Below are positions 1,157 through 63,652 of a stretch of DNA of 64,000 nucleotides, piece after piece (the first letter of the stretch is position 1; the number at the start of each line of letters is the position of its first letter). The notes under the pieces were generated by a model. The model saw nothing but the letters and a program-made list of their open reading frames with translations. It had not been told where the DNA came from and did not search any database. This DNA is from Mytilus californianus (taxonomy: Eukaryota). Where the stretch lies: the NCBI RefSeq assembly GCF_021869535.1, contig NW_026262615.1, positions 9,610,001 to 9,674,000 of the forward strand, in the 5' to 3' direction. A program made the translations under genes and the position numbers.

Positions 1157-1482
1157 GTATATATACATTTCAGGTATCAGTCATCCTTATAATTAAAGAA
1201 AAAGATAAGAATGAAAAACTTTTTATTATTTTATACCTAACACTTTCACTAAAATAGCTCATTTAATTTTTATAAAATATTGATAAAATAGTAACTTTGA
1301 CCTGTCGAGAAAAATAGAAATTTGTACCACACATTTTTAATACAGGAATAATTTCATTGGATATATTGCAGCTTGATTAAAACATTTAGTTGATTTTAAA
1401 AAGAGGTAACTCATTTAGGTGTTGTGTAAACTCCCCCTTTTTTAGTGTAAAGTAAAATCCATTATTGAAACAGTTTTCTTAC

Positions 1483-1676
<194 letters not shown>

Positions 1677-1698
1677 CTGCAAAAGATACATAGATATA

Positions 1699-26132: not shown

Positions 26133-26210
26133 TTATCGTGATGCCTCTGTGGAAGATGTTGCACTTTCTTTGGCTTGATGAGCTTGCAGTACAGCAACGG
26201 CTTCTTGTAC
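26133..26210 (-). CDS. Terminal MLLE helix-5 exon, [25 protein letters not shown]
   Basis: tgttacag acceptor; homologous to PABP exon 11 (42961-43035) including the following 3'UTR. Confidence 0.88.
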   Translation of the reverse strand, partial: VQEAVAVLQAHQAKESATSSTEASR

Positions 26211-29200
26211 CTGTAACATATATGTTATTAAAGTTAATTTTAGTCATGAATGATGTTGAAGACTTATATTATAAAAAAATATAAAGCATTAAACAGTTTC
26301 TTTTTTTTGGCCACCGCTTTAGCATCCATTTGTCTCACATTTTGTGACATTCGTCATATGTATGACAAAAACAATAAAAAGGAAGCTACAAACACTGAAA
26401 ACGTCTCTTTATTTTAGTCAATAACGGGGTTCAATAATTCCCGTAATATTCAAATCTACATTAAGATGATTAAAGTATCTAAATAAAAATTAAACTTTAT
26501 TTTTTATAAACACAGCAAATTGAACCTGTTTGCACCGACATGACATTCTTAACCAGAACCAATTTAATTGTATCTTAAAGGCATACTGTTATATAATACA
26601 AGTAAAGCTTTAATTTCAACAGAATTTTGGTTTTGGTAAACATGTCATTCTTATCATGTGGAAATACTGTATTACAACCTACGAACATTGGTAACTTTAG
26701 TAAAAAGAGAAAAGCATAGCCTTTGTGAAAAATAAATATAAAAAGTATTGACTCTTTGTAGACTGACAGATTACAATGCATTAAGTAGTTGTTTCAGATG
26801 TTCCTGTTGCAACAAATATACTTCAGCTCATATGGATCAATCATTTCCTGTTGTCCATTGAGAAGACATTTCATTTCCTTTTTATTATTTATATCATTTG
26901 AGTAACAATACCCTTTGAAAAGAAAACAAGAGGCTATGAAGGGTCCGCGTCGCTCATCTGGATTTTTGTGCACCTTTAACAACGGTTACTTTCCAACAAT
27001 GTATAATTGAATATAGTTCCGGTCACATATCTGTTTTTGTTTATCGTTATACTGATCATTTTTCTGTTTACTTTCTATCTACTTTAGTGTTGCCAAAATT
27101 ACACAATGATGAGTAAAATTCATTATTCAAGGGCAATAACTCCTTACAGGAGATTAGTGAAAATTTCGTCTGTGCTGATCAGTCTTGCAGGTCATTGTTC
27201 CTGCAAACTGTTTCGCTGTATCTTCTGTAGGTTTAGCCAAAAACAAAAAGAAGGGTAGCATTAATAAGGAGTCAACTCACAACATGTCGCTTTGCTGACT
27301 CTTTTTGAGATCTTGTATTGCTCATTATTTTTTGTCATATTTCAGCCGCTATCTATTCAATATCCTTTTTTTAAGGCAACAACGAACTATAATAAGAAGT
27401 AGAATGACAATTGCAGCTTTTCGACACAAATACGTAGATCTAAACCTGCTAATCAGTTTTGATCTTTAAAGTTTGTCTCTACCTTTTATAATTTTGAAGA
27501 GTATTGGCAAAAAAAAATTAAAATTGTGAAAATTGTCATTTAAGGGAAATAACTCCTGTAGTAAGTCGTTTGACATTTTTTATCAAATGTGTTGATTTTG
27601 ACATTCTGAATTTTTTTCTGCTGTCAGATTGTCTTTACCTATATTTATTTTTAAAATACTAGACAATACCTAGGCATTTTAACTCTTTGTTGGTTTTTGT
27701 AGCCTTGAAGGCCATGTTGGTTAACCATCGGAATCATGGGAAAAATTTTGTAAACTAGATACAAAAAGGATGATTGTTGCTGCTTTGTTCAATTTGGCTC
27801 CGTAGTTTAAAGGAAGAAGATTTTCCGCAAAGTTTACAAACTACGACGACGGACGACAACGCGGAAGATAAGTGATGGCAAAAGCTCACAATGACCTTTT
27901 GGGTCAAGTGAGCAAAATGGCTTTTGTTTTTAATGTTTTTATAGAATTGTATGTTAATTAATTTCGGCGGGAAGGTGAAAAACCAATCCATATGAAATGT
28001 AGTGTACTATGTGATAAATGTAAGTGAACAGTGAAGTAAAACAGAGAACACGCCTCTTTAATCATTTGTCCTACAAACCTTAAACTCTAATGACTCCTTG
28101 AATTCCAACATGTGTAATAATTCTGGATTTTCCATTTCCAGTAACATTCCAGTGATCTTTCCAGCCAGGTTTGGGTACATACTTTGGATCAGAGGGAACA
28201 AACGTTCTCCTAATATCTGTTTCTGTTCCTGTTGGGGGACGTCGGCAAACATTTCAACAGTCAGGGGACCCTGAAAATTGTAAGAATTGCTAGTTCTCAT
28301 TTCTTTTCATAAACATTTTATTTCTATTTTTCACTAAGTTCAAAACTGAAACTTAACTGTTCCTTCTTGAGAAACGCCAATACTTTATTCAATGTTGTTT
28401 ATAATTTTATTTTCACGGCTTTATCAATTTTCAAAAGAAGTAATAAATATAAAAATAATCATACTAAAATCAAAAGAAGAATATTATCCAATGACCGCAT
28501 TCTTTCCTGTACAAATGCAGTCGATGAGAGGTGGGAAACATGACAAATGAATGTATTTAATCATCCAGCACCTCTCGACCCGTTGCATTACCTCCATTAA
28601 ATATATTGAATTAAGAATCGATCTTCAATCAGATTGTCACTTAGAAAGAGTTCTTCAGTTGTACCCAGAAAAAAAAACTTACCAATCCTTATATGTACCT
28701 ACCTGGGTTTCTTTTGTTTGATGAACGTGCAGTAAACCAACGGCTTCTCGTACCTATGAAATATATCTATTTAAAGTTAATTTTGGTGTATAGAAAAATA
28801 CACTGAACCATGAAAAGTAGGATAACGAATACATCTGCTTTATGATATAAAGTATCGAGGTTTGTCCTTGTTTGACAACTGAAGCTTTATACAAAGAGTG
28901 TTTTGCCATTGCATTAGCATATCTATGTCTACCTTTCGTCACAGGCAAGATAAAACCATGAGAATACAGGTACAAACACTCAAAAAGTTTCCTCGTTTTA
29001 CATATAGTCACTGACGGAGTTCTATTTTTTTTTTAAATTTTCTTATCTCCATTATATTATCTGGATAAAAGCTATAAAACAATTTTCAAAAAAATGCTGT
29101 AAATTTTACACGTTTTACCAAAGGGCATCCTTGACCAGAAGAAATTACATGGCATCGTGAAGACACAATTTTCTGGCAATACATGAAAAGCTTTACTTGA

Positions 29201-32200
29201 TAAAAATATCATTCTTATTTTGTTGGTAAAATGAACAAAAATCTTTGAAAATTGCAAATTTGAGCATTTATTGTGTGGTAAAATGGTCACGAATAGGCAC
29301 TTATATTGTCAAAAATTGCAAGTATGCATAATTAAAGTGGGATACTGTGTATTTTTTAGCAAACGGAAAACCTTAGCCTTGGTGTAAAATAAATTTTTAA
29401 TATCTGACCGGAATAACAAGTATATTAAAGTGCATGTGTTAGTTGTTTTAGATATTCTTGTTTCACAAAATTTAGCTACCATTCATCAACATGGATGTGC
29501 AATTTCCTGTTGTCCATGATAGGAGAGACACTACATTTCTTCTTAATTATTTAAAACAATTGAATAAAACGAGTGGTTCTAAAGAGTCGCTCAATTGGAT
29601 CTATGTGCCTCTTCAACAACGGTCACTTTACAACATTGTATATAATTCCGTTTTTTTTTTCTTTTTTTCAACTTGTAATACTGAAAATGTCTTTTGTGTT
29701 TCTCTCTACCTACAACTCTTAATCTTATCTATGGTTAGAAAATTGGCAATTAGGGCACTAATTCCTATCTTAAAATTTGGTCAAACGACAATATGTAGAT
29801 CTTGACTTTCTTAGCCTTTTGCCATGTCAGATTATTTCTACATGCATTATGGTTTTCACAATCCTAAAAAATATTTGCATATTACCCCTTGTTTATTTTA
29901 TCCTTGGCGAACATGTTTGTTGGATCATTGGTATCATCTTAAAACTATATACCCCAAGGATAATTTGGCTGTTGGTTCATTTGGCCAAATAATTTCAGAT
30001 GAAAAGATTTCCGAAAAAATCACAGATATCGACGTTGAATGGCAACGACGGACGTCATGACATAAACTCAAACTCAAAAAGTAAGAACAAACTATTGTGT
30101 TCATTGTTTTTATAACATGTTACGTTAATTAATTTCTCTGGGAAGGTGGAAAACGCAAAATCCATCTGAATAATAGTGTGCATGTATCATATGATAATAA
30201 GTGTTTAGTGAAGTTAAAAAAAAGAGTACATTAACACTCCCATTTAATCATGTGTTCTACAAACCTTAGACTCTAGTGAATCCTTAAATTCCAGCATGTG
30301 TAATAATTCTGGATTTTCCATTTCCAGTAACATTCCAGTGATCTTTCTAGCCAAGTCAGGGTGCAGACTTTGGATCAAAGGGAACAAACGTTCTCCTAAC
30401 ATCTGTTTCTGTTCCTGTTCAGGTGCGTCGGCCAACATGGTGGCAGTCAGAGGCTCCTGTCTTATGACTTTAATCATTTGTCTCTGGGCCTGAGGCTTAA
30501 ACATAATTATGTTTGCGTTTATGCTGACGGTCATTAGGCAATACAATTATGAAGTATGTATGGGACACCATATCGTGCTGTCATGCATCGACAATGAAGA
30601 CATTTTTTGTTTATTCTTAACGCTGAACATAAGTTGTGTAATTGTTAGACTTTCTCGTATGCAACGTGTTTATCCAAATCTCATTTCTAATTTTCACTTA
30701 GTGCAAATCTGAAACTTTACTGTTCCTCCTTGAAGTTCTCAAAATACCTTTAGTGTTTTTTTGTTGTTGTTTTTTAATTACCAAAGCTTCATCAATTTTG
30801 AAAACGAGTTAATTATACTAAAATCAAAAGAAAAATATGATTCAATAACCTTATTCTTTCGATTACAGATGCAGTCGAAGATCAAAGGTAGAAAACATGG
30901 CCAATGAATGTATTCAACCATTTCACACCTATCGACGAGCCGATGCACTACCTGCACTTTTTAAGATATGGAATGGGGGATCAATTTGTAATCCGATTGT
31001 TCATGTTGTTACTTAGAAAGAGACCTTCTGTTGTCCCCAGAAGAAAAAAACTTACCAATACCGATCTGTACCTACCTGGGTTTCTTTTGTTTGATGATCG
31101 TGCAGTAAACCAACGGCTTCTCGTACCTATGAAATATATATAAATGAAATGATTTGGTCATAAATGAATTTGTTGAATTTTCATACAAACATGCAGCAAC
31201 ATAATATGCATATCAAGAATGCTGCAAATTGTACATGTTTGTACCAAAGGGCATCCTTGACCTGAACAAATTATACTGTATCTTAAAAGCACAATTTTCC
31301 GGCAAGTAAAGCTTTACTTATAACAGAAATATAATTTTGATAAATATCATTCCGATTTTTTTTTTTGTGAAAATTTCGAAAAACTACAAAAATGACAAAT
31401 TTAGGCTATTTTTGTGTGGCTAAATGATCAGTAAAAGGCAAAAAAATTGTCTGAAAGTGCAAGTATGTATAATGAAAGGGAGTAACAGTGAATTTTAGTA
31501 AAGGAAGAACAGCTTAGACTTTGTTGGAAATAAATTCTTAAATAATTGACTCTACTTCATAGTACTGACAATAATATTAAAATTCAATTAGTAGTTGTTT
31601 CAAATGTTCCTGTTTCAACAAACATATGTACACTTTACCTCAAATAGATGTGCAATTTCCTGTTGTCCATGATAGGAGGGGATATTTCATTTCTCCTTTA
31701 TTATTAATAACAACTAAATTTACAATACCTTTGGAAAATAAAACAAGTGGTTTTAAAGAGTCGCTCAATTGGATCTATGTGCCTCTTCAACAACGGTCAC
31801 TTTACCACATTGCAGACTAGCATATATTTCATTTTTATCTTCATTTTCAACTTGATATACTAAAAATGTATTTTGTGTTTCTCTCTATCTACAATTCTTA
31901 TCTTATCTATGTTTAAACAATTGTCAATTAGGGCAGTTATTCCTATCTTACAATTTAGAACGAAACGACAATATGTAGATCTTGACTTTCTTAGCCTTTT
32001 GCCATGTCAGATTTTCTCTTATAGTTTTCCAAATAGTAGACAATACTTGCATTTGAGCCTTTTTGTTATATATTTATCCTTAGTGGTCATGTTAGTTGGG
32101 TAGCGGGATCATGTGACACATTTGTTAACTAGATAACCCAAGGAAAATTGTGGCTGTTGGTTCTTTTGGCCAAATAGTTTAAGAGGAGAAGATTTTTGAC

Positions 32201-32577
32201 GATTAGCCAAGACAACAACTCACACTGGCCCTTATGACAAAGTGGGCAAACAATATATTTGAGAAGGTGTAAAAAGCAAAATCAATCAGAATTGTAGTGT
32301 ACATGTATCAAATAAATAATCAAACTAAGCGTTTACAGGAATAAAACATAGATTGCCGTTACTCTACCCTTTAATAATTTTTACTACTAACTTGAGCCTC
32401 TAGAGATTCCTTGGATTCAAACATGTGTAACAATGATGAATTGTCGTTTTTCAGTAACATTCGAGTGATCTTTCCAGCCAGGTCAGGGTACATACTTTGG
32501 ACAAGAGGGAACAGATCTTCTCCTAATATATGTTCCTGTTGTGGTGCGTCAGCCACCATGGTAATAGTCAGATATGG
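26133..32577 (-). CDS. Triple-MLLE (PABC) domain module, six exons, no RRM exons; 256 aa if initiated at ATG 32559
   Basis: join(32577 or 32559..32392, 31126..31076, 30495..30265, 28753..28703, 28270..28079, 26210..26133). Every exon is open, every junction is GT/AG and phase 0. Each MLLE carries GE.LFPL.QS..P.LA.KIT.MLL followed by a V.EAV..L..HQ.KE helix exon. Confidence 0.8.
26926..27917 (+). mobile_element. Decayed Helentron/HINE-like element inside the MLLE intron
   Basis: Starts acaagagg..cgctcatctg, contains aagggcaataactcc, ends gacgacggacgac..aagctcacaatgaccttttgggtcaagtgagcaaaa; same architecture as 37635-39397. Related copies at about 29568-30080, 31743-32250 and 61560-62862. Confidence 0.65.
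28079..28270 (-). CDS. MLLE exon 3 (64 codons), [64 protein letters not shown]
   Basis: caattttcag acceptor and AAG|gtttgt donor; KITGMLLE signature intact. Confidence 0.9.
28703..28753 (-). CDS. Internal helix-5 exon, [17 protein letters not shown]
   Basis: tttcatag acceptor, CAG|gtaggt donor, 51 nt, phase 0/0. Confidence 0.85.
30265..30495 (-). CDS. MLLE exon 2 (77 codons), [77 protein letters not shown]
   Basis: Same 231-nt length as PABP exon 10; atgtttaag acceptor and AAG|gtttgt donor. Confidence 0.88.
31076..31126 (-). CDS. Internal helix-5 exon, [17 protein letters not shown]
   Basis: tttcatag acceptor, CAG|gtaggt donor; one nucleotide different from 28703-28753. Confidence 0.85.
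32392..32577 (-). CDS. Degenerate MLLE exon 1, (PYLTIT)[56 protein letters not shown]
   Basis: Open frame; CAA|gttagt phase-0 donor; candidate acceptor ttttcatccctaag at 32578 and ATG in ACCATGG context at 32559; two-codon deletion and KITRMLLK instead of KITGMLLE. Confidence 0.7.
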
Positions 32578-33299
32578 CTTAGGGATGAAAATCTCAACAA
32601 TTTACATATTTTGGAACATGATCGAATGATCGAGATAGAGATGATCCCATTAGACTCCCCCTATAGATCATTCTATGCGTTTTGATATGACACACAAGAA
32701 CATATCGTTTATCTTATGAACCTCGATCCTTTACTAGATAGTTTAACATTTCCAAATTGAATAGAGTGGAGATGACCCCAAGACCACTCAACATGTATAT
32801 TATTCAATTCATTTTGACATGTCAAACAAGAAAATATATGGCGTAGGTTTTTTAATCTTAACCATTTTTTTAAGATATTGATACATCAAGAACCGGAGGT
32901 GCTTTGGAAGGGGAAGTAGATCCTGCTTTACATTGATTTACGAGATTTGAACATCGGTAAACTTCTGTCGCCGTTATTTATGAATATCTGTTCAGACAAT
33001 TCAGTATGTTGTTGGTTTTACAGGTAAATTACAGCTACTAAACAGTCTTAACAAAGATTGAGCATGTCTAAATTGACTGCAAGCAATCGCGAATTGTCCT
33101 AACTCTACTAAATTCACCGCAGAAGAAAAGTCTGATAAGTGTCTTAAAAACTGACATATTACTTACAGATTTTTTTCTCAGTCTTTTAAGATCTGTTCAG
33201 ATCAAAATTACTTTTTTAGTTCAAAACTGGTTTACAAGTGTGAGAATCAGTTAGCGTCACTTGAAAAATATATTCACTAAATTACAAGAATTTCTTAGG

Positions 33300-37634: not shown

Positions 37635-39397
37635 ACAAGAGGCTCTCAAGAGCCTGAATCGCTCACCTGTTATTTTTTTTGCTTAAATCTTTCATCAATG
37701 ATTTTTTTTGCTGTTTACCCATATGTTCCATTTTAGCTATAGTGTCTATGTTTCTTGACGTACAAGGAAATGAAGTACAAAATTTATACTAGATTCATTT
37801 CAGAAGATTTTTAAAGTAAAAAAACATCAAACAACTTGAGTAAAACTGTCCTTAAAGGGCAATAACTCCTAAAGGTTTATATAATAGATCATATGTAGAT
37901 CTTACTTTGCTGAACATTTGTGCTGTTTACAGTTTATCTTTATCTTCAATAATATTCAAGATAATAACAAAAAACTGCAAAATTTCCTTAAAACAACCAA
38001 TTTAGTGGCAGCAACCCAACAATGGGTTGTTCGGTATGTCTGCATATTTCAGGGCAGATAGATCTTGACCTTTGGAACATTTTTACCCCCGGTCAGATTT
38101 GCTCTAAATGCTTTAGTTTCTGAGATATAAGCCAAAAAACTGCATTTCACCCCTATGTTCTATTTTTAGCCATGGCGGCCATGTTTGTTGATGGATCAAA
38201 ATTTCGGATACAATTCATAAACTAGATTCCTAAAGGAACATTCATTCAAAGTTAAGAAGTATTAGGCACAATAGTTTCAGAAGAGAAGATTTATAAATGT
38301 TAGCAAACTTGATGAACACATTGCGTAAAATTGTATTTAAAGGGCAATAACTCCTTAAGGGGTCAATTGACAGATTTGCTCATTTAATTTTCTGTAGATC
38401 TTACTTTGCTGAACATAATTGCTGTTTACAGTTTATATCTATCTATAATAATATTCAAGATTATAACAAAAAACTGCAAAATTTCCTCAAAACTACCAAT
38501 TTAGTGGCAGCAACCCAACAATGGGTTGTTCGATTTGTCTGAAAATTTAAGGGCTGATAAATCTTTACCAATTGAACAATTTTACTCGTGTCAGATTTGC
38601 TCTAAAAGCTTTAGTTTTGGAGATATAAGCCAAAAACTGCATTTGACCCCTATGTTCTATGTTTAGCCATGGCAGCCATGTTTGTCGATGGATTAAAACT
38701 TCGGATACAATTTATAAACTAGATATCCTAAGGAACATTTAGATGAAGTTTCAAGGTATTTGGGCAAGTAGTTTCAGAGGAGAAGATTTTTAAATGTTAC
38801 CAAACTTGATGAACAAATTGTGTAAAATTGTCTTTAAAGGGCAATAACTTCTTAAGGGGTCAATTGACAATTTTGGTCATATAAAAACTTTTTTGTAGAT
38901 CTTACTTTGCTGAACATTATTGCTGCTTACAGTTTATATCTATCTATAATAATATTCAAGATAATAACAAAAAACTGCAAAATTTCCTTAAAACTACCAA
39001 TTTAGTGGCAGCAACCAAACAATGAGTTGTTCGATTCGTCTGAAAATTTGAGGGCTAATAGATCTTGACCAATTGAACAATTTGACCTCATGTCAGATTT
39101 GCTCTAAAAGCTTTAGTTTTTGAGATATAAGCAAAAAACTGCATTTGACCCCTATGTTCTATTTTTAGCCATGGCGGCCATGTTTGTCGATGGATCAAAA
39201 CTTCGGATACAATTTATAAACAAGATACCCTAAGGAACATTTAGTTAAAGTTTGAAGGTATTTGGCCCAGTAGTTTCAGAGGAGAAGATTTTTGAAATAG
39301 TTTACGACGACAGACGACGACAGACGACGGACGACGACGGACGCCAAGTGAAGGCATAAGCTCACATGGGGCCCTTCGGGCCCCGGTGAGCTAAAAA
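37635..39397 (+). mobile_element. Helentron-associated HINE-like element with three about 490-bp internal tandem repeats, nested in an about 145-bp tandem repeat (37420-37630, 39398-39770)
   Basis: 5' palindrome ggctctcaagagcc and subTIR gctcacc; units starting aagggcaataact at about 37855, 38339 and 38836; (gacgacg)n microsatellite; 3' hairpin AGCTCAC-at-GGGGCCC-ttc-GGGCCCC-g-GTGAGCT (39359-39392) then aaaaa. Confidence 0.75.
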
Positions 39398-39935: not shown

Positions 39936-40863
39936 CACTACTAACTGCTCAGAGTCTGAAAAGACCATATTTCCTGGTCGAGCACTGATTTTACTTGACA
40001 AGACTCCACATAATCTCGACAGTACTTAATTGTGCTCGACTTCGGTCTCGACTTTACTTAATAAGTCTCGACTGATCTTGACTCTGTCTGAATCAGCCTA
40101 TCTATCTCAATTATATTTTGATCTTACAAAATGCCAGGTTATTTGGTAGTTTGGTTTATTGCTGTCAAACTTAAGGATTTAATTAATTGGTAAAAAGGCT
40201 AGAATTTTCAGTTCAGTTATAATTGAGATAGCTGTAGACTTTTGTGAAAATCCATGTTGATTTTGAAAAAGTTATAGAAATTTTTAAAGGTGACTATCTG
40301 AATTTAGTCGGAACTGAAATGTCTAGTAAAATCAATATATAATTGAGATAGCTGTAGAGTTTTATGAAAATCCAAGTTGATTTGAAAAAGTTATAGTAAT
40401 TTTTAAAGGTGACGATCTGAATTTAGTCCGAACTTAAAATTCTAGTAAAATCAATATATAATTGATATAGTTGTAGAGTTTTATGAAATTCCAAGTTGAT
40501 TTGAAAAATTGTACAAATTTTTAAAGTTGACTATCTGAATTTAGTCTGAACTGAAAATTCTAGCTTTTTTCACTTATTAATTAAATTCTTGAATTCTACA
40601 GCAATAAACCAAACTACCAAATAACCTGGAATTTTGTAAGATCAATACATAATTGAGATAGATGGCCTGATTCAGACCAGTGGTGACTAAATTTTAAGGA
40701 CAAGACTGGTCGAGACAGGTCGAGACTAAATCGAGGCTGGTCGAGACTAAGTCGAAACTGGTTGAGACTGATCAAGACTGGTCCAGCATTGGTCGAGACC
40801 ATATTCAGAATGTACCAAGTCGAGCACAAAATATGGTCATTTCAGACTCTGCAGTTTGTAGTG
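39936..40863. mobile_element. CACTA (CMC-EnSpm) MITE, 928 bp
   Basis: CACTAC...GTAGTG termini with a 3-bp TSD CAA on both sides; about 250-bp imperfect inverted arms (cagagtctgaaa.gaccatattt..; ggttatttggtagtttggtttattgctgt); multiple gtcgagact subterminal motifs; three about 120-bp internal tandem repeats (40218, 40338, 40457). Confidence 0.85.
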
Positions 40864-41474: not shown

Positions 41475-42960
41475 ATATTTTAACATCATTTTTATCATGT
41501 TTTTCTTAGTTCCATAACTGAAATAACAACATATATAAAACACACAACACTAATCTGTTCCCGTTTGATCTTATTCTCCTCCATTTGAATGTTGTATGCC
41601 CTTAAATAAATTTCTCTAGGTTTTTTTTTAGCTGTTCAAATGGACAAAAAATTAATCAAATGAGATCAGAACAAGAACACATCACATCACTGGTTTAATT
41701 GTGTTTATCAGTCTTATTTTTCACTTTAAAATCTTCAATGAGTGATGAGCTCTTCAAAAAGGAGGTAAAGCAGAGTAAACAAAGTGTAGAAATGAAACAG
41801 TAGCATTTCCCCTAAGACATTACGCATGGAAAGAATTAAAACTACTGGCATAAAACAATCTCAAATTTTTTACACATATTTTACATGATTTATACAATTT
41901 TTTTGTTCTTTTTTTAACGTAATATATTACACTTTTTATTTAACAGCTGCACCACACAATGCAGCTGTATATTTTCATATTAATTCAATCATTGTAGGAT
42001 AAAGTTAATAATCTAATAATTTGTTTACATACTTACCTGGTTAAAAAAACAGTATATAATGAGCAGGTTTTATCAATTTATACCTTTTTTTCTCTTTTTG
42101 TACAATATTTTTCATAATTTTCATTACAGGATGGAAACTTTTAAAAGAGGTTCACCAAGGGAGATAATTAGAACAAGATTTTCATTTGCTAACCTGTTAC
42201 ACTGAATGTTTAAAATCCTTATTTAGATATTAATTTGAAAACTTATTCTCAAGAAATAACATTGATTTCACAAACCATTGATAAACAAAGTGATTTTCTG
42301 AATTATAAAAAAAATATCAATTGGTGTAATAAAGCTAATGGAACACATCAACAGCTATGAAATGTTGATATAACAATGAAACGTTACATGAACAATGTAA
42401 TTAATGTACACTTCTTATATGTATAAACAAAAATAGGTCAAGAAGTGTGTTGCTGTACATTTAAATAATTTACCATACTATTTTGACTAATAAAGGAAAT
42501 GGTTTTGTACATTGAACATTTGTTCTATTCGGGACAATATTGTTTCTTGATCTATTTGTACTGAGGTGACCACACTACTTCTCATCTTCAAAATATGTGA
42601 TGATAGTGTGCCTCATTTTACATATATTTCTTATTGTTGTGATTGGTTAAAAATGTGTAAAATAACAGATTTTCAAATGTTACAGGAATACTGTAATAAG
42701 CTATAAAATGGTGTCAAAGCTTCAAACTAATTGTATAAAGTGAGATGTTATGGTTAAATGTGGTTGAAATTGAAAAATAAACAATCCAAATCATATAACT
42801 ACATGATAAATATACAATAATAATAAACAAGTGGGCAAACATATCTGAACAAAAGCTCTATCAATACAGTTTATAAATGCTTGTAGTCATGGTAACAAGA
42901 AAATCTGTCCAATAATCTGCCCTTAGGATCTACTCTAATCCGGTTTCCTTGGTACCCTCT

Positions 42961-59570
<16,610 letters not shown>

Positions 59571-60596: not shown

Positions 60597-63500
60597 TTAA
60601 AAGCTGATTGCAGTGTTTATACGTGTAATTATAGAAAAAAGGAAATCTGTCAAATATCTAGCTATAGAATCTACCCTAATTTGGTTTCCACGGCACCCTT
60701 CGTAACTTGTTGCTTCTATGGAAGTTAAAGCAGTTTCCTTTGCATGGTTAGCTTGCAGTACACCGACGGCTTCTTGTACCTGTAAAATATGTGTTATTAA
60801 AGGTAATTTTAGTCATAAATGATGTTGTAAAGTTCTCATACTAACAAGCAGCAAAATTATACGCCTACGTAGATACGCTGAACCATAAACAGGAGGAGAC
60901 TCTGTTTACAAGATATGACGATTCACGGTTTTCTGCTTTTTGAAATATTTATCTTTACACAATTTTACCACTGTATTAGGATCCCAATGTCTCAGATTTT
61001 GTGACATTTGTCACATGTGAAAAAAAAACAAGAAAAGCTACAAATAATAAAATCTCCTCTATATTTTATGTTTAGTCAATCACGGGGTCCAATGATTCAT
61101 GTAAATATTCAAAACTACATTAAAGTATCTGGATAAAAACTTGAGCATTTTTTCTAAAACACTGAAAATTTAACCTGTTTGCACCAAAATGACATCCTTA
61201 ACCAGAACAAATAAAATTGTTCTCACACACCTTCTGTTTTACAATACAAGTAAAACTTTACTTCCAACCGAATTAGGGTTTCGGTAAACACGTCATTTTT
61301 ATCATGTGGAAAATATTTATAACATCATAAGAAAATTTTGAAATTTAGTAAAGAGAGAAAAACTAAGCCTTTGTGTGAAATATATTTTCAAAATATTGAC
61401 TCTTTGTAGACTGACAGATTAGTTGTTTCAGATGTTCCTGTTGCACCAAATATTCTTCAGCTTACAAAGATTTATCATTTTCTGTTGTCCATGGAGAGGA
61501 CATTTCATTTCCTTTGTATAAGTTATAGCATTTGAGTTTACAATACCTTTTATATAATTCAAGAGGCTCTAAATGGCAATTGTCGCTCATCTGGATCAAC
61601 ACCGGATACTTTCTAACAGTGTATAATTGATTCTAATATGACGTTCTTCAAACGCTTTTCAGTACACACCCGTAGTGAAATGTGAATATATTGTATGTCA
61701 GCTGATCTGATCGGCAACGTCATGATTTGTTTGGGCTGTTCTAATCATACTCCCACGTCATATGCTTTTTTTATGAACGAGCTACCCGACGTCATTCGGT
61801 GCTAATGACTATAAAGTCAAAAGAATATAAGTATTTTACGGGAAATGCACGGTTGAGGAACTAAAAGTCACCAAAACAAGGAATCATAAACACACTATGA
61901 TAAAACAAATTTAAATGCCATTATTTTACATATATATATAAGATTATTATTTAAATTCTTCCAAACCTTTCTAAGTACGTTATTGTTAATAGTTTAAGCA
62001 TGTCACTAGTTCAGTTTTCTCCATTCTTTTACGTCAATATAAATAGTGTCTTTAATTACGGGAACGGCAAATGTTTGCCTTCACCTAGAGCTTCGATTTA
62101 AAGTATTGCCGTATTTGTCCTATTAGAATAGAAATAATTCCGGTCTGCAATCTGTTTTTGTTTATTATAATACTGGTCTTTCTTCTGTTTTCATTTTCTT
62201 TCTACTTTAGTGTTGCAAAAAATTCATCAGTCAAGGCCAAAAACTCCTCACCGGAGATTATTGAAAGTTTCTTCTTTTCGATCAATTTGTCTCAATCGTC
62301 TTGCAAGTCTTTGTTTCTGTATTCGTTGTATCTTTTTAAAACGTAGGGTAGTATTTATAAGTACGCGAACTGACAAAATGTAGCTATGCTGACTCTTTGG
62401 AGATCTTGTTTTGCTCATTATATTTTATATATTTCAGCTGCTATTTATTACAGTTTCATTTAAAATGTTAAAAATGGGTTAAAGTCCTCATTCAAAGGCA
62501 ACAATCTAATAAGAAGTCGAATGTTAATTGCAGTGTTGTTGACAAATCTGACGATCTAGGCCTGCTATTTCTACTGTCAGATATTCTTTATCTATATTCA
62601 TTTTCCAATCAGTAGACAATACTTAGGCATTTTAACCCTCTATGATTTAGCCTTGGAGGCCATGTTGGTTAGCCATCAGAATCATGGGAGAAATTTTGCA
62701 AGCTAGATACACCAAGGATGATTGCTACTGCTTTGTTCAATTTGACCCCGTAGTTCAAAAAAGAAGATTTTCGAAAAATTAACAAACATTGTCGACGGAC
62801 GACAATGCGGACAATAAATGATGGCAAAAACTCACAATGACCTTTGGGTCAAGTCAGCAAAAAGGCTTTTGTTTTCAATGTTTTTATAGAATCGTGGGTT
62901 AATTATTGTGTGCAGGAAGTTGAAAAAGCCAAATCCGTTTGAACTATAGTGTACCATGTGATAAATCTTAGTGTACAGTGAAGTAAAACAGAGTATACAT
63001 TAATACTCCTCTTTTATCATTTGTCCTACAAACCTTATACTCTAGTGACTCCTTGGATTCCAACAAGTGTAACAATTCATAATTGTCTATTTCCAGTAAC
63101 ATTCCAGTGATCTTTCCAGCCAGGTCTGGGTACATACTTTGGATCAGAGGAAACAAACGTTCTCCCAACATTTGCTTATGTTCCTGTTGGGGGGAGTCAG
63201 CCAACATGGTAGCAGTTAAGGGCAACTGAAAATTGTAAGATTCGCTTGTGTGCATTCTTATTTATCAAAATTTTATTTCTATTTTTCACTAAGTACAAAA
63301 CAGAAACTTAACTAATCCCCTTTGAAGAAACACTTTTATTTGATGTTGTTTATAGTTGAATTACCACGGCTGCATCAATTTTGAAAAGAATTTATCAGTA
63401 TCAAAATAATCATGATAAAATCAATAGAAAAAAATTAATCCAATGACCTGATTCTTTACAATACAAATGCAGTTGACGAGCAGTGGTATTATCTGCCCTA

Positions 63501-63652
63501 AATATATGGCATTAAGAATCGATTTTCAATCAGATTGTCACTTGTAGAGAGAGCGAGAGTTGGCCAAAAAACAAACTTTTTAATACCCAATTTATATCTA
63601 CCTGTGTTTCTTTTGTCTGGTGACCTTGCAGTATAGCGACGGCTTCTCGGAC
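60597..63652 (-). CDS. 3' part of a second tandem-MLLE module (continues beyond the window end)
   Basis: join(63652..63602 [17 protein letters not shown], 63225..63034 [64 protein letters not shown], 60779..60597 [20 protein letters not shown]). All phase 0 and GT/AG; introns and 3' flank are collinear with 25840-29050. Confidence 0.85.
61560..62862 (+). mobile_element. HINE-like element orthologous to 26926-27917, with an extra about 500-bp insert (about 61631-62135)
   Basis: aagaggctct..cgctcatctgg start and gacggacgac..aactcacaatgacctttgggtcaagtcagcaaaa end. Confidence 0.65.

What the first reader, a model, noticed from the sequence alone, without database searches (positions are those of the whole stretch)
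26133..32577. Tandem triple-MLLE module without RRMs: candidate multivalent PAM2-motif binder
Seen: three MLLE (PABC) exons alternate with helix-5 exons. All six are open, GT/AG-bounded and phase 0, although the about 2.1-2.4 kb introns between them have diverged with many indels. I found no RRM exon between 32.6 and 41 kb. From ATG 32559 the module encodes 256 aa made only of MLLE domains. Established: MLLE binds PAM2 motifs in eRF3, PAIP1/2, PAN3, TOB, GW182/TNRC6, ataxin-2 and LARP4, and normally occurs once, in PABPC and UBR5/EDD. Inference: a protein of repeated MLLEs unable to bind poly(A) could titrate or cross-link PAM2 proteins, affecting deadenylation, termination or miRNA silencing. 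I do not recall a described tandem-MLLE-only family, but I cannot search the literature here.
Basis: partly seen in the sequence, partly recalled or inferred. Interest (0 to 1): 0.9.

Follow-up and report, generated by a model that had tools for sequence, protein, structure and literature searches.

The report
Triplicated PABP tail exons in mussel
Three tandem copies of the last two exons of a poly(A)-binding-protein gene could be spliced into a 254-residue protein made only of MLLE domains, but it evolves almost neutrally, one copy is dead in a sister mussel, and no transcript was found.

Summary
On the minus strand, three MLLE exons (Pfam E 2e-19 to 1.8e-26) alternate with three helix-5 exons. 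All are open, have canonical splice sites and are in phase 0. They give a 254-aa (or 256-aa) MLLE-only ORF.

The module is one block of a larger array of MLLE modules and PABP genes. A divergent PABP gene with its own MLLE tail lies upstream, and a second module lies beyond that.

Mytilus coruscus has the same module in the same order. Its units 1-2 are intact. Its unit 3 carries two stops and two lost splice sites.

Between the two species the exons are no better conserved than the introns (90.1% vs 92.6%), and mismatches fall evenly on codon positions. Yet the window copy has no disabling lesion, H1 and H2 are 98% identical, and M2/M3 have dN/dS of 0.17-0.30 against paralogues.

No transcript or annotated protein was found.

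The idea is less novel than proposed. Fungal Rrm4 has three MLLEs, plant MPC is MLLE-only, and molluscan and echinoderm databases hold many multi-MLLE models.

Verdict: real, weakly constrained, function unproven. Other first-reader notes of this scan on the same window already recorded the array.

The parts
32392..32559 (-). M1: first MLLE exon. The ORF is open up to 32601. A possible phase-0 acceptor (ccctaag|CC) lies at 32580/32581. The signature is degenerate: [10 protein letters not shown] instead of KITGMLLE, plus a 2-codon deletion in helix 2.
   Evidence: Pfam MLLE E 2e-19. Boundaries. The ATG and the donor are conserved in M. coruscus.
31076..31126 (-). H1: internal helix-5 exon of 17 codons, bounded by acceptor tttcatag| and donor CAG|gtaggt. 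If the donor is not used, the frame stops 7 codons later.
   Evidence: It matches H2 at 50 of 51 nt, against 76-78% in the flanking introns.
30265..30489 (-). M2: second MLLE exon. It is the best Pfam match. The first Gly of the LAGKITG motif is replaced by Arg.
   Evidence: Pfam E 1.8e-26. The acceptor at 30489 is conserved in M. coruscus as tag|. dN/dS is 0.17 against M0 and MA.
28703..28753 (-). H2: internal helix-5 exon of 17 codons, with the same acceptor and donor type as H1.
28079..28270 (-). M3: third MLLE exon. It is the only one with the full canonical [11 protein letters not shown] signature.
   Evidence: Pfam E 1e-25. It aligns to human PABPC1 MLLE structures at E 1e-24. The M. coruscus orthologue has an in-frame stop and a GT-to-AT donor change.
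26133..26210 (-). H3: terminal helix-5 exon with the canonical [15 protein letters not shown] sequence and a TAA stop. AATAAA/ATTAAA signals lie about 100 and 270 nt downstream.
   Evidence: The M. coruscus orthologue has an in-frame stop and an AG-to-AA acceptor change.
42964..59531 (-). Context: the upstream divergent PABP gene. It has RRM exons, linker exons, its own MLLE exon (44088-43837) and its own terminal helix-5 exon (43035-42964, with a stop codon).
   Evidence: ORFs. tblastn with the M. edulis protein P0003. Helix-5 scan.
60714..63652 (-). Context: a second MLLE module upstream of the PABP gene, cut by the window end. It has an internal helix-5 exon (63652-63602), an MLLE exon (63228-63031) and a terminal-type helix-5 exon (60782-60714) whose stop codon is lost.

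Best explanation
The stretch is a tandem triplication of the last two exons (MLLE exon and helix-5 exon) of a lineage-specific mussel PABPC paralogue. It sits inside a higher-order array in which MLLE modules alternate with PABP genes.

In the two upstream copies, the former terminal exon has a strong phase-0 donor (CAG|GTAGGT). Because every boundary in the unit is phase 0, the units can be joined into one reading frame of three MLLE domains (254 aa).

I think it most likely that this is, or was until very recently, a weakly constrained coding module. Its product would bind PAM2-type peptides mainly through the canonical third domain. The first two domains each carry an Arg in place of a signature Gly, and would act as accessory or altered-specificity domains, much as in the Rrm4 platform.

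Shown here: the anatomy, the domain identity, the orthology with M. coruscus and the selection statistics. Inferred: splicing, expression, the start site (standalone gene or appended to other exons) and any PAM2 binding.
For: Anatomy and domains:
- Exons, frames and splice sites.
- Pfam MLLE on all three M exons. M3 against human PABPC1 structures.

Orthology:
- A collinear module exists in M. coruscus (L001). M1, H1, M2 and H2, with all their splice sites and the ATG, are intact there.

Lack of disabling lesions:
- There are no indels in 762 exon nt, although 59 indel events occur in the alignment and about 6 would be expected in the exons.
- There are 2 stop-creating changes where about 4-5 are expected, and both are in the M. 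coruscus copy.
- My own Poisson estimate from these numbers gives P of about 0.003-0.01 for no disabling lesion in the window lineage.

Long-term constraint:
- H1 and H2 match at 50 of 51 nt, against 76-78% in the flanking introns.
- M2 and M3 are 86.5% identical, against about 68-75% in the introns.
- dN/dS is 0.17 for M2 against M0 or MA, and 0.30 for M2 against M3.

Precedent in relatives:
- The M. edulis RefSeq model XP_071144526 (P0003) joins a 17-residue internal helix-5 segment directly to the next MLLE exon, at positions matching these exon boundaries, in the sister module.
- Proteins that carry only repeated MLLE domains exist as database models: Ostrea edulis 194 aa and Anneissia japonica 294 aa. 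162-aa examples occur on short Logan contigs, three of which share a 5' end.
Against: - Between the window and M. coruscus, exons are 90.1% identical and non-exon sequence 92.6%.
- Exon mismatches fall 28/22/26 on codon positions 1/2/3. There are 76 substitutions against 59.5 expected from intron rates.
- dN/dS is about 0.5 overall. A rough chi-square of my own on the, 38 counts gives p of about 0.12, so this is not separable from neutral.
- Polarised counts are 15 non-synonymous to 8 synonymous in the window lineage and 30 to 6 in M. coruscus.
- Unit 3 is dead in M. coruscus, with two stops and two lost splice sites.
- M1 is no closer to M2 than the introns are (79% vs 76%).
- No modB-like protein exists in the 55-175, 97-308 or 230-731 aa ranges, apart from the chimeric M. 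coruscus model P0029.
- RNA contig sets of the same species label hold at most 0.01 of the sampled words. By my estimate about 0.09 (6-kb stretch) or 0.27 (675-nt stretch) would be expected if the exons were in assembled transcripts.
- No promoter, 5' exon or MIF4G exons were found upstream.
Confidence: 0.4

Rival explanations
1. The module is a non-functional relic. The exon pairs were copied by segmental duplication along with the PABP array. They were constrained for a time, or homogenised by gene conversion, and are now untranscribed pseudo-exons drifting neutrally. The open frames in this species are survivors that have not yet been hit.
For: - Exons diverge as fast as or faster than introns, and mismatches are spread evenly over codon positions.
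- M. coruscus unit 3 has four disabling lesions, and its M2 and M3 show 27 non-synonymous to 4 synonymous changes.
- M1 is as diverged from M2 as the introns are.
- There is no transcript signal in RNA contig sets of the species and no annotated protein.
- No upstream 5' exon or MIF4G part was found, unlike the sister module in M. edulis and M. trossulus.
Against: - There are no indels, stops or splice-site losses in the window copy across 762 nt plus 10 splice dinucleotides, nor in units 1-2 of M. coruscus, where several would be expected.
- H1 and H2 are 98% identical although their flanks are 77-82% identical.
- The low dN/dS of M2 and M3 against paralogues shows that constraint lasted well after the triplication.
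Confidence: 0.4
2. The module is an alternative 3' tail of the upstream PABP gene. The phase-0 donor of its last linker exon (47003) would splice to the phase-0 acceptor of M1, M2 or M3, skipping the gene's own MLLE tail. This would give a PABP with one to three MLLE domains. Each unit might also serve as a mutually exclusive terminal exon pair, using the read-through stop 7 codons after H1 or H2.
For: - All boundaries are phase 0 and on the same strand, 10.4 kb downstream of the PABP's terminal exon.
- A conserved candidate acceptor lies just upstream of the M1 ATG.
- H1 and H2 have in-frame stops 7 codons past the donor, with AATAAA/ATTAAA signals downstream.
- No AATAAA/ATTAAA lies within about 760 nt after the PABP's own stop codon.
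- RefSeq models in M. edulis and M. trossulus do join MLLE modules and PABP exons in one transcript.
Against: - No protein model shows such a junction in the searches that were possible.
- It needs 14-19 kb introns that skip a complete and well-formed terminal exon pair.
- In the relatives the module is joined upstream of the PABP exons, not downstream.
- It is untested by reads.
Confidence: 0.2

Closest known systems
PABPC1-type C-terminal MLLE (PABC) domain, as in PDB 3KUS/3KUR
   Same: All three M exons match Pfam PF00658. M3 aligns to human PABPC1 MLLE at E 1e-24 with the [11 protein letters not shown] signature intact. The split into an MLLE exon and a helix-5 exon is the same as in the neighbouring PABP gene's own tail.
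   Different: There are three copies in a row, and no RRM exons within 10 kb. M1 and M2 each replace a signature Gly with Arg, and M1 also has E-to-K and a 2-residue deletion (sequence reading).
[quoted passage not shown]
   Same: Several MLLE domains sit in one polypeptide. One is canonical, and the others lack a pocket Gly. In Rrm4, Ser or Arg at that Gly goes with loss of PAM2/PAM2L binding.
   Different: Rrm4 has three N-terminal RRMs, is fungal, and its MLLE3 is a seven-helix variant that binds PAM2L. Sequence similarity to M3 is marginal (E 0.66-0.73). I could not establish which of the two Gly residues here corresponds to Rrm4 Gly736.
MPC (MATERNALLY EXPRESSED PAB C-TERMINAL) of Arabidopsis (Tiwari et al. 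2008, cited in PMC4307191)
   Same: It is a gene that encodes only the PABP C-terminal domain, without RRMs, and derives from a PABP duplicate.
   Different: MPC is described as encoding the C-terminal domain only, not a tandem of them. It is a plant gene, with shown expression and an RNAi phenotype. None of that is shown here.
Multi-MLLE database models in molluscs and echinoderms
   Same: These models carry repeated MLLE domains. Some carry only MLLE in the precomputed Pfam column.
- M. edulis XP_071144526: MIF4G + 2 MLLE + PABP
- M. trossulus XP_063406765: MIF4G + MLLE + linker + MLLE
- Ostrea edulis: 194 aa, 2 MLLE
- Anneissia japonica: 294 aa, 3 MLLE
- Octopus vulgaris: 593 aa, 6 MLLE
- Plakobranchus ocellatus: 461 aa, 3 MLLE
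The M. edulis model uses the same internal helix-5-to-MLLE junction as proposed here.
   Different: They are predictions, and my literature searches found no paper on them. The Mytilus models carry a MIF4G domain that is absent from this window. The oyster gene is intronless. None is the orthologue of this module.

Membership tests
MLLE / PABC domain (Pfam PF00658) | The profile HMM match is above the curated gathering score | tested here: met
   M1 scores 69.8 bits, M2 92.3 bits and M3 89.9 bits, against a cut-off of 27.
MLLE / PABC domain (Pfam PF00658) | The KITGMLLE signature and helix 5 complete the five-helix bundle | tested here: inconclusive
   M3 is fully canonical. M2 has R for the first Gly of LAGKITG. 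M1 has KITRMLLK. Each M exon is followed by a helix-5 exon. No fold was computed, because the spliced product has no reference.
MLLE / PABC domain (Pfam PF00658) | Binding of PAM2 peptides | not testable with these tools
   This needs ITC or pull-down with eRF3, PAIP2 or similar peptides.
Cytoplasmic poly(A)-binding protein (PABPC) | Four N-terminal RRMs in the same polypeptide | tested here: not met
   There is no RRM exon between 26 and 43 kb. The nearest RRM exons belong to the gene at 50-59.5 kb, which has its own tail. Splicing between the two could not be tested.
Rrm4-like multi-MLLE platform | Three MLLE domains in one expressed polypeptide | not tested
   The ORF is continuous across the phase-0 junctions.
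MPC-like RRM-less PABC-only gene | A transcript that starts at or near the MLLE exon and contains no RRM exons | not tested
   The ATG at 32559 has an ACCATGG context and is conserved in M. coruscus. It is, however, the ancestral internal Met, and no 5'-end data were available.
Dead duplicate (pseudo-exons) | Disabling lesions: stops, frameshifts or lost splice sites | tested here: not met
   The window copy has none. The M. coruscus orthologue has four, all in unit 3.
Dead duplicate (pseudo-exons) | Neutral substitution pattern: exon rate equal to intron rate and no third-position excess | tested here: met
   Exons are 90.1% and non-exon sequence 92.6% identical. Mismatches fall 28/22/26 by codon position. 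There are 76 substitutions against 59.5 expected. This is dominated by the M. coruscus lineage.

The most novel reading that the evidence does not exclude
The module is an expressed, RRM-less protein of three MLLE domains that acts as a multivalent binder or decoy for PAM2-motif proteins (eRF3, PAIP, PAN3, TOB, GW182, LARP4) in a restricted tissue such as the germline. It would be one member of a wider class of tandem MLLE-only proteins in molluscs and echinoderms (oyster 2x, crinoid 3x, octopus 6x). My literature searches found no description of such a class.
Probability: 0.2. Interest if true: 0.7.

Novelty: new variant of a known kind. Interest (0 to 1): 0.45.

Why it matters
MLLE domains are the hub through which PABP recruits termination, deadenylation and miRNA-silencing factors. 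A protein with several MLLEs and no poly(A) binding would be a natural competitor or scaffold for those factors.

The searches here show that molluscs repeatedly multiply this domain. They also fuse it to a PAIP1-like MIF4G domain. My literature searches found no paper describing either.

The locus also shows step by step how a terminal exon can become an internal one. It gains a phase-0 donor, and a domain is then concatenated by exon-pair duplication.

For this particular copy, function is unproven. The evolutionary signal is weak, so its value is as a lead rather than a result.

Tried and rejected
- **Run searches.** The second run search gave only word shares, not junctions.
- **Protein searches.** I looked for an annotated or transcript-derived protein of the module in three length windows. 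The only hit was P0029 from M. coruscus. Its 323-residue tail maps 6-9 kb downstream in that genome and is absent from this window, so I rejected it as a chimeric model.
- **MIF4G exons.** I looked upstream of M1 for MIF4G exons like those of the sister module in M. edulis and M. trossulus. There are none in the window or in the M. coruscus flank.
- **Other loci.** The M. edulis locus of P0003 is not on record. The M. trossulus locus has no module within 10 kb downstream.
- **Spliced product.** I did not fold or look up the spliced 254-aa product.
- **Global alignment.** Aligning unit 1 against unit 3 misplaced the short H exon. That row is disregarded.
Full report
**1. What is there**

On the minus strand between 32.6 and 26.1 kb there are three open frames with clear MLLE sequence. 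Each is followed 0.4-1.9 kb downstream by a short frame that encodes helix 5.

The exact exons are:
- M1: 32559-32392
- H1: 31126-31076
- M2: 30489-30265
- H2: 28753-28703
- M3: 28270-28079
- H3: 26210-26136, followed by TAA

All internal boundaries are AG|...|GT and phase 0. The introns are 1265, 586, 1511, 432 and 1868 nt.

Pfam MLLE matches the three M exons at E 2e-19, 1.8e-26 and 1e-25. M3 aligns to solved human PABPC1 MLLE structures at E 1e-24.

Joined, the exons give 256 aa with the M2 acceptor at 30495, or 254 aa with the acceptor at 30489. The 30489 acceptor is the one conserved in M. coruscus. The other would bring a stop codon into frame there.

**2. Context**

The module is not isolated.
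- A divergent PABP gene lies upstream on the same strand. Its ATG is at 59531, followed by RRM exons and linker exons. It has its own MLLE exon (44088-43837) and its own terminal helix-5 exon with a stop codon (43035-42964).
- Upstream of that gene lies another MLLE module. It has an internal-type helix-5 exon at 63652, an MLLE exon at 63228-63031, and a terminal-type helix-5 exon at 60782-60714 whose stop codon is lost. The window end cuts this module.
- An RRM2-like exon remnant lies at 1692-1480.

The region is thus an array in which MLLE modules alternate with PABP genes, as other first-reader notes on this window say.

There are two kinds of helix-5 exon.
- The terminal type ends in a stop codon (H3, and the PABP gene's own).
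- The internal type has 17 codons ending ...KETQ, followed by a strong donor CAG|GTAGGT (H1, H2 and the copy at 63652).

If the donor of the internal type is ignored, the frame stops 7 codons later. The internal type is therefore a former terminal exon that has gained a donor.

**3. Relatives**

A profile-free search of 1.84 billion representative proteins with M2 gave many proteins with 2-7 separate MLLE stretches. The named ones are:
- Mytilus edulis XP_071144526: 1073 aa, with MIF4G, 2 MLLE and a full PABP
- M. trossulus XP_063406765: 616 aa, with MIF4G, MLLE, linker and MLLE
- Ostrea edulis: 194 aa, 2 MLLE only, encoded by an intronless gene
- Anneissia japonica: 294 aa, 3 MLLE only
- Octopus vulgaris: 593 aa, 6 MLLE
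- Plakobranchus ocellatus: 461 aa, 3 MLLE
- Babylonia and Nucella: long proteins with 5-7 MLLE

Short Logan contigs encode a complete 162-aa two-MLLE protein. Three contigs from different runs begin at the same base, which suggests a transcript 5' end.

The M. edulis RefSeq model maps best to the window's upstream module plus PABP gene. It joins a 17-residue internal helix-5 segment directly to the next MLLE exon, at positions that correspond to these exon boundaries. This is indirect support that such junctions are used in Mytilus.

The MIF4G exons of those models are absent from this window and from the M. coruscus flank.

**4. The orthologue in M. coruscus**

Protein P0029 ("PABPC", M. coruscus) led to locus L001. 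It carries the same six exons in the same order and spacing.

M1, H1, M2 and H2 are open there, and all their splice dinucleotides and the ATG are kept. Unit 3 is broken four times:
- a stop inside the KITGM.. motif of M3
- the M3 donor changed from GT to AT
- the H3 acceptor changed from AG to AA
- a stop in H3

P0029 itself is a chimeric model. Its tail maps 6-9 kb further downstream in M. coruscus and has no counterpart in the window.

**5. Tests of constraint**

*Recent evolution, window against M. coruscus.* This looks close to neutral.
- Exons have 689 matches and 76 mismatches (90.1%). Non-exon sequence has 5274 matches and 421 mismatches (92.6%).
- Mismatches fall 28/22/26 on codon positions 1/2/3.
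- Applying intron-derived rates to the exons predicts 59.5 substitutions, of which 69% non-synonymous, 24% synonymous and 7% nonsense. The observed 76 substitutions are about 49 non-synonymous, about 25 synonymous and 2 nonsense. A rough chi-square of my own on these counts gives p of about 0.12.
- dN/dS by the Nei-Gojobori method is 0.51 overall and 0.44 for units 1-2.
- Polarising the changes with the paralogues gives 15 non-synonymous to 8 synonymous in the window lineage, and 30 to 6 in M. coruscus.

*Disabling changes.* These are too few for neutrality.
- None of the 59 indel events falls in the 762 exon nt, where about 6 are expected.
- There are 2 nonsense changes against about 4-5 expected.
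- Every lesion is in unit 3 of M. coruscus.
- From these numbers I estimate, as inference, about 4-6 expected disabling hits in the window lineage against 0 seen (P about 0.003-0.01). The picture is similar for units 1-2 of M. coruscus.
- Indel rates in low-complexity intron sequence overstate the expectation for exons, so these P values are rough.

*Long-term evolution, between the units.* This shows clear constraint on most exons.
- H1 and H2 match at 50 of 51 nt, while the flanking introns are 76-78% identical.
- M2 and M3 are 86.5% identical, against about 68-75% in the introns.
- dN/dS is 0.17 for M2 against the PABP's own MLLE exon and 0.30 for M2 against M3.
- M1 is the exception. It is 79% identical to M2, against 76% in the introns, and its dN/dS against the other copies is 0.31-0.65.

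*Reading.* The module was a selected coding unit for a good part of its history. It is now under weak constraint at best. It is already partly dead in one sister species.

**6. Expression**

No junction evidence could therefore be obtained. I worked beside those places afterwards.

Word-index searches give weak negative evidence.
- The RNA contig sets under the same species label (12 listed for the 6-kb stretch, 7 for the 675-nt stretch) hold 0.00-0.01 of the sampled words.
- By my estimate, about 0.09 of the 6-kb stretch, or about 0.27 of the 675-nt H2-M3 stretch, would be held if the exons were in assembled transcripts.
- The two large holders (0.23-0.35) have contig totals of genome size and are probably DNA.
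- RNA sets of two related organisms hold 0.06-0.07 of the short stretch. That is 4-5 words, which I cannot interpret.

No annotated or transcript-derived protein resembling the module turned up in the 55-175, 97-308 or 230-731 aa ranges, apart from P0029. Proteins longer than 731 aa were not covered by those searches.

**7. How it would work**

If the module is expressed as one ORF, the product is three MLLE bundles joined by short linkers.

Only M3 keeps the full [11 protein letters not shown] signature. M2 has Arg for the first Gly. M1 has Arg for the second Gly, Lys for the Glu, and a two-residue deletion in helix 2.

In Rrm4, MLLE domains with Ser or Arg in place of the pocket Gly do not bind PAM2 or PAM2L, and they act as accessory domains (PMC9249222). 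I could not establish which Gly here is the equivalent one.

The most likely biochemical picture is therefore one PAM2-binding domain plus two domains of altered or lost specificity, rather than a trivalent PAM2 cross-linker.

Whether the ORF starts at ATG 32559 is open. That codon is the ancestral internal Met, in an ACCATGG context, and is conserved in M. coruscus. Alternatively the ORF may be entered from upstream exons through the conserved candidate acceptor at 32580.

**8. Novelty**

The literature held here describes two relevant precedents.
- Arabidopsis MPC is a gene that encodes only the PABP C-terminal domain (PMC4307191, citing Tiwari et al. 2008).

Searches for multiple, tandem or MLLE-only proteins, and for MLLE with Mytilus, found nothing on animals.

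Tandem MLLE-only proteins of animals thus seem undescribed. They are, however, already present as database models, and this particular copy lacks any expression evidence.

I rate it a new variant of a known kind, of moderate interest.

Noticed in passing
window 60714-63652 (-): A second MLLE module lies upstream of the PABP gene. Its terminal-type helix-5 exon has lost the stop codon (TAA to TAC). In M. trossulus the same exon has a new donor (GAG|GTAACA) that the RefSeq model splices to linker exons.
   Followed up: partly
P0003 (M. edulis XP_071144526) and P0007 / L007:10001-25173 (M. trossulus XP_063406765): RefSeq models fuse a MIF4G domain (Pfam PF02854; PAIP1-like by my reading) to MLLE domains. 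The M. trossulus locus has no RRM exons between the module and the linker exons. MIF4G-MLLE chimeras appear to be undescribed.
   Followed up: partly
L008:6001-6585 (Ostrea edulis OX387705.1): An intronless gene encodes a 194-aa protein of two nearly identical MLLE domains. It may be a retrocopy followed by an internal duplication.
   Followed up: no
window 37894-39298, 40218-40563: Tandem arrays of a 497-nt unit (2.8 copies, 89% matches) and a 119-nt unit (2.9 copies) lie in the 10-kb gap between the PABP gene and the module.
   Followed up: no
window 1480-1692 (-): A lone RRM2-like exon is 68% identical to the M. edulis PABP. No RRM1 exon was found between it and the module. It is probably the remnant of the next PABP copy in the array.
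   Followed up: no
window 42200-42963 (-): There is no AATAAA or ATTAAA within about 760 nt after the stop codon of the PABP gene's own terminal exon, in a genome that is 68% A+T. By my estimate about 2 would be expected, so this is not significant.
   Followed up: no
L001:9989-10216 (M. coruscus M2): There is a cluster of amino-acid changes in helix 1 of the M. coruscus M2 (PLTATMLA in the window, PQYACILG there), and 14 non-synonymous to 2 synonymous changes on that lineage. This is faster than the introns and is unexplained.
   Followed up: partly
window 28079-28753: Fourteen RNA contig sets of two related organisms each hold the same 0.06-0.07 share of sampled words. This could be a short conserved exon piece or an expressed repeat in the intron. 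It could not be resolved without laying reads.
   Followed up: no
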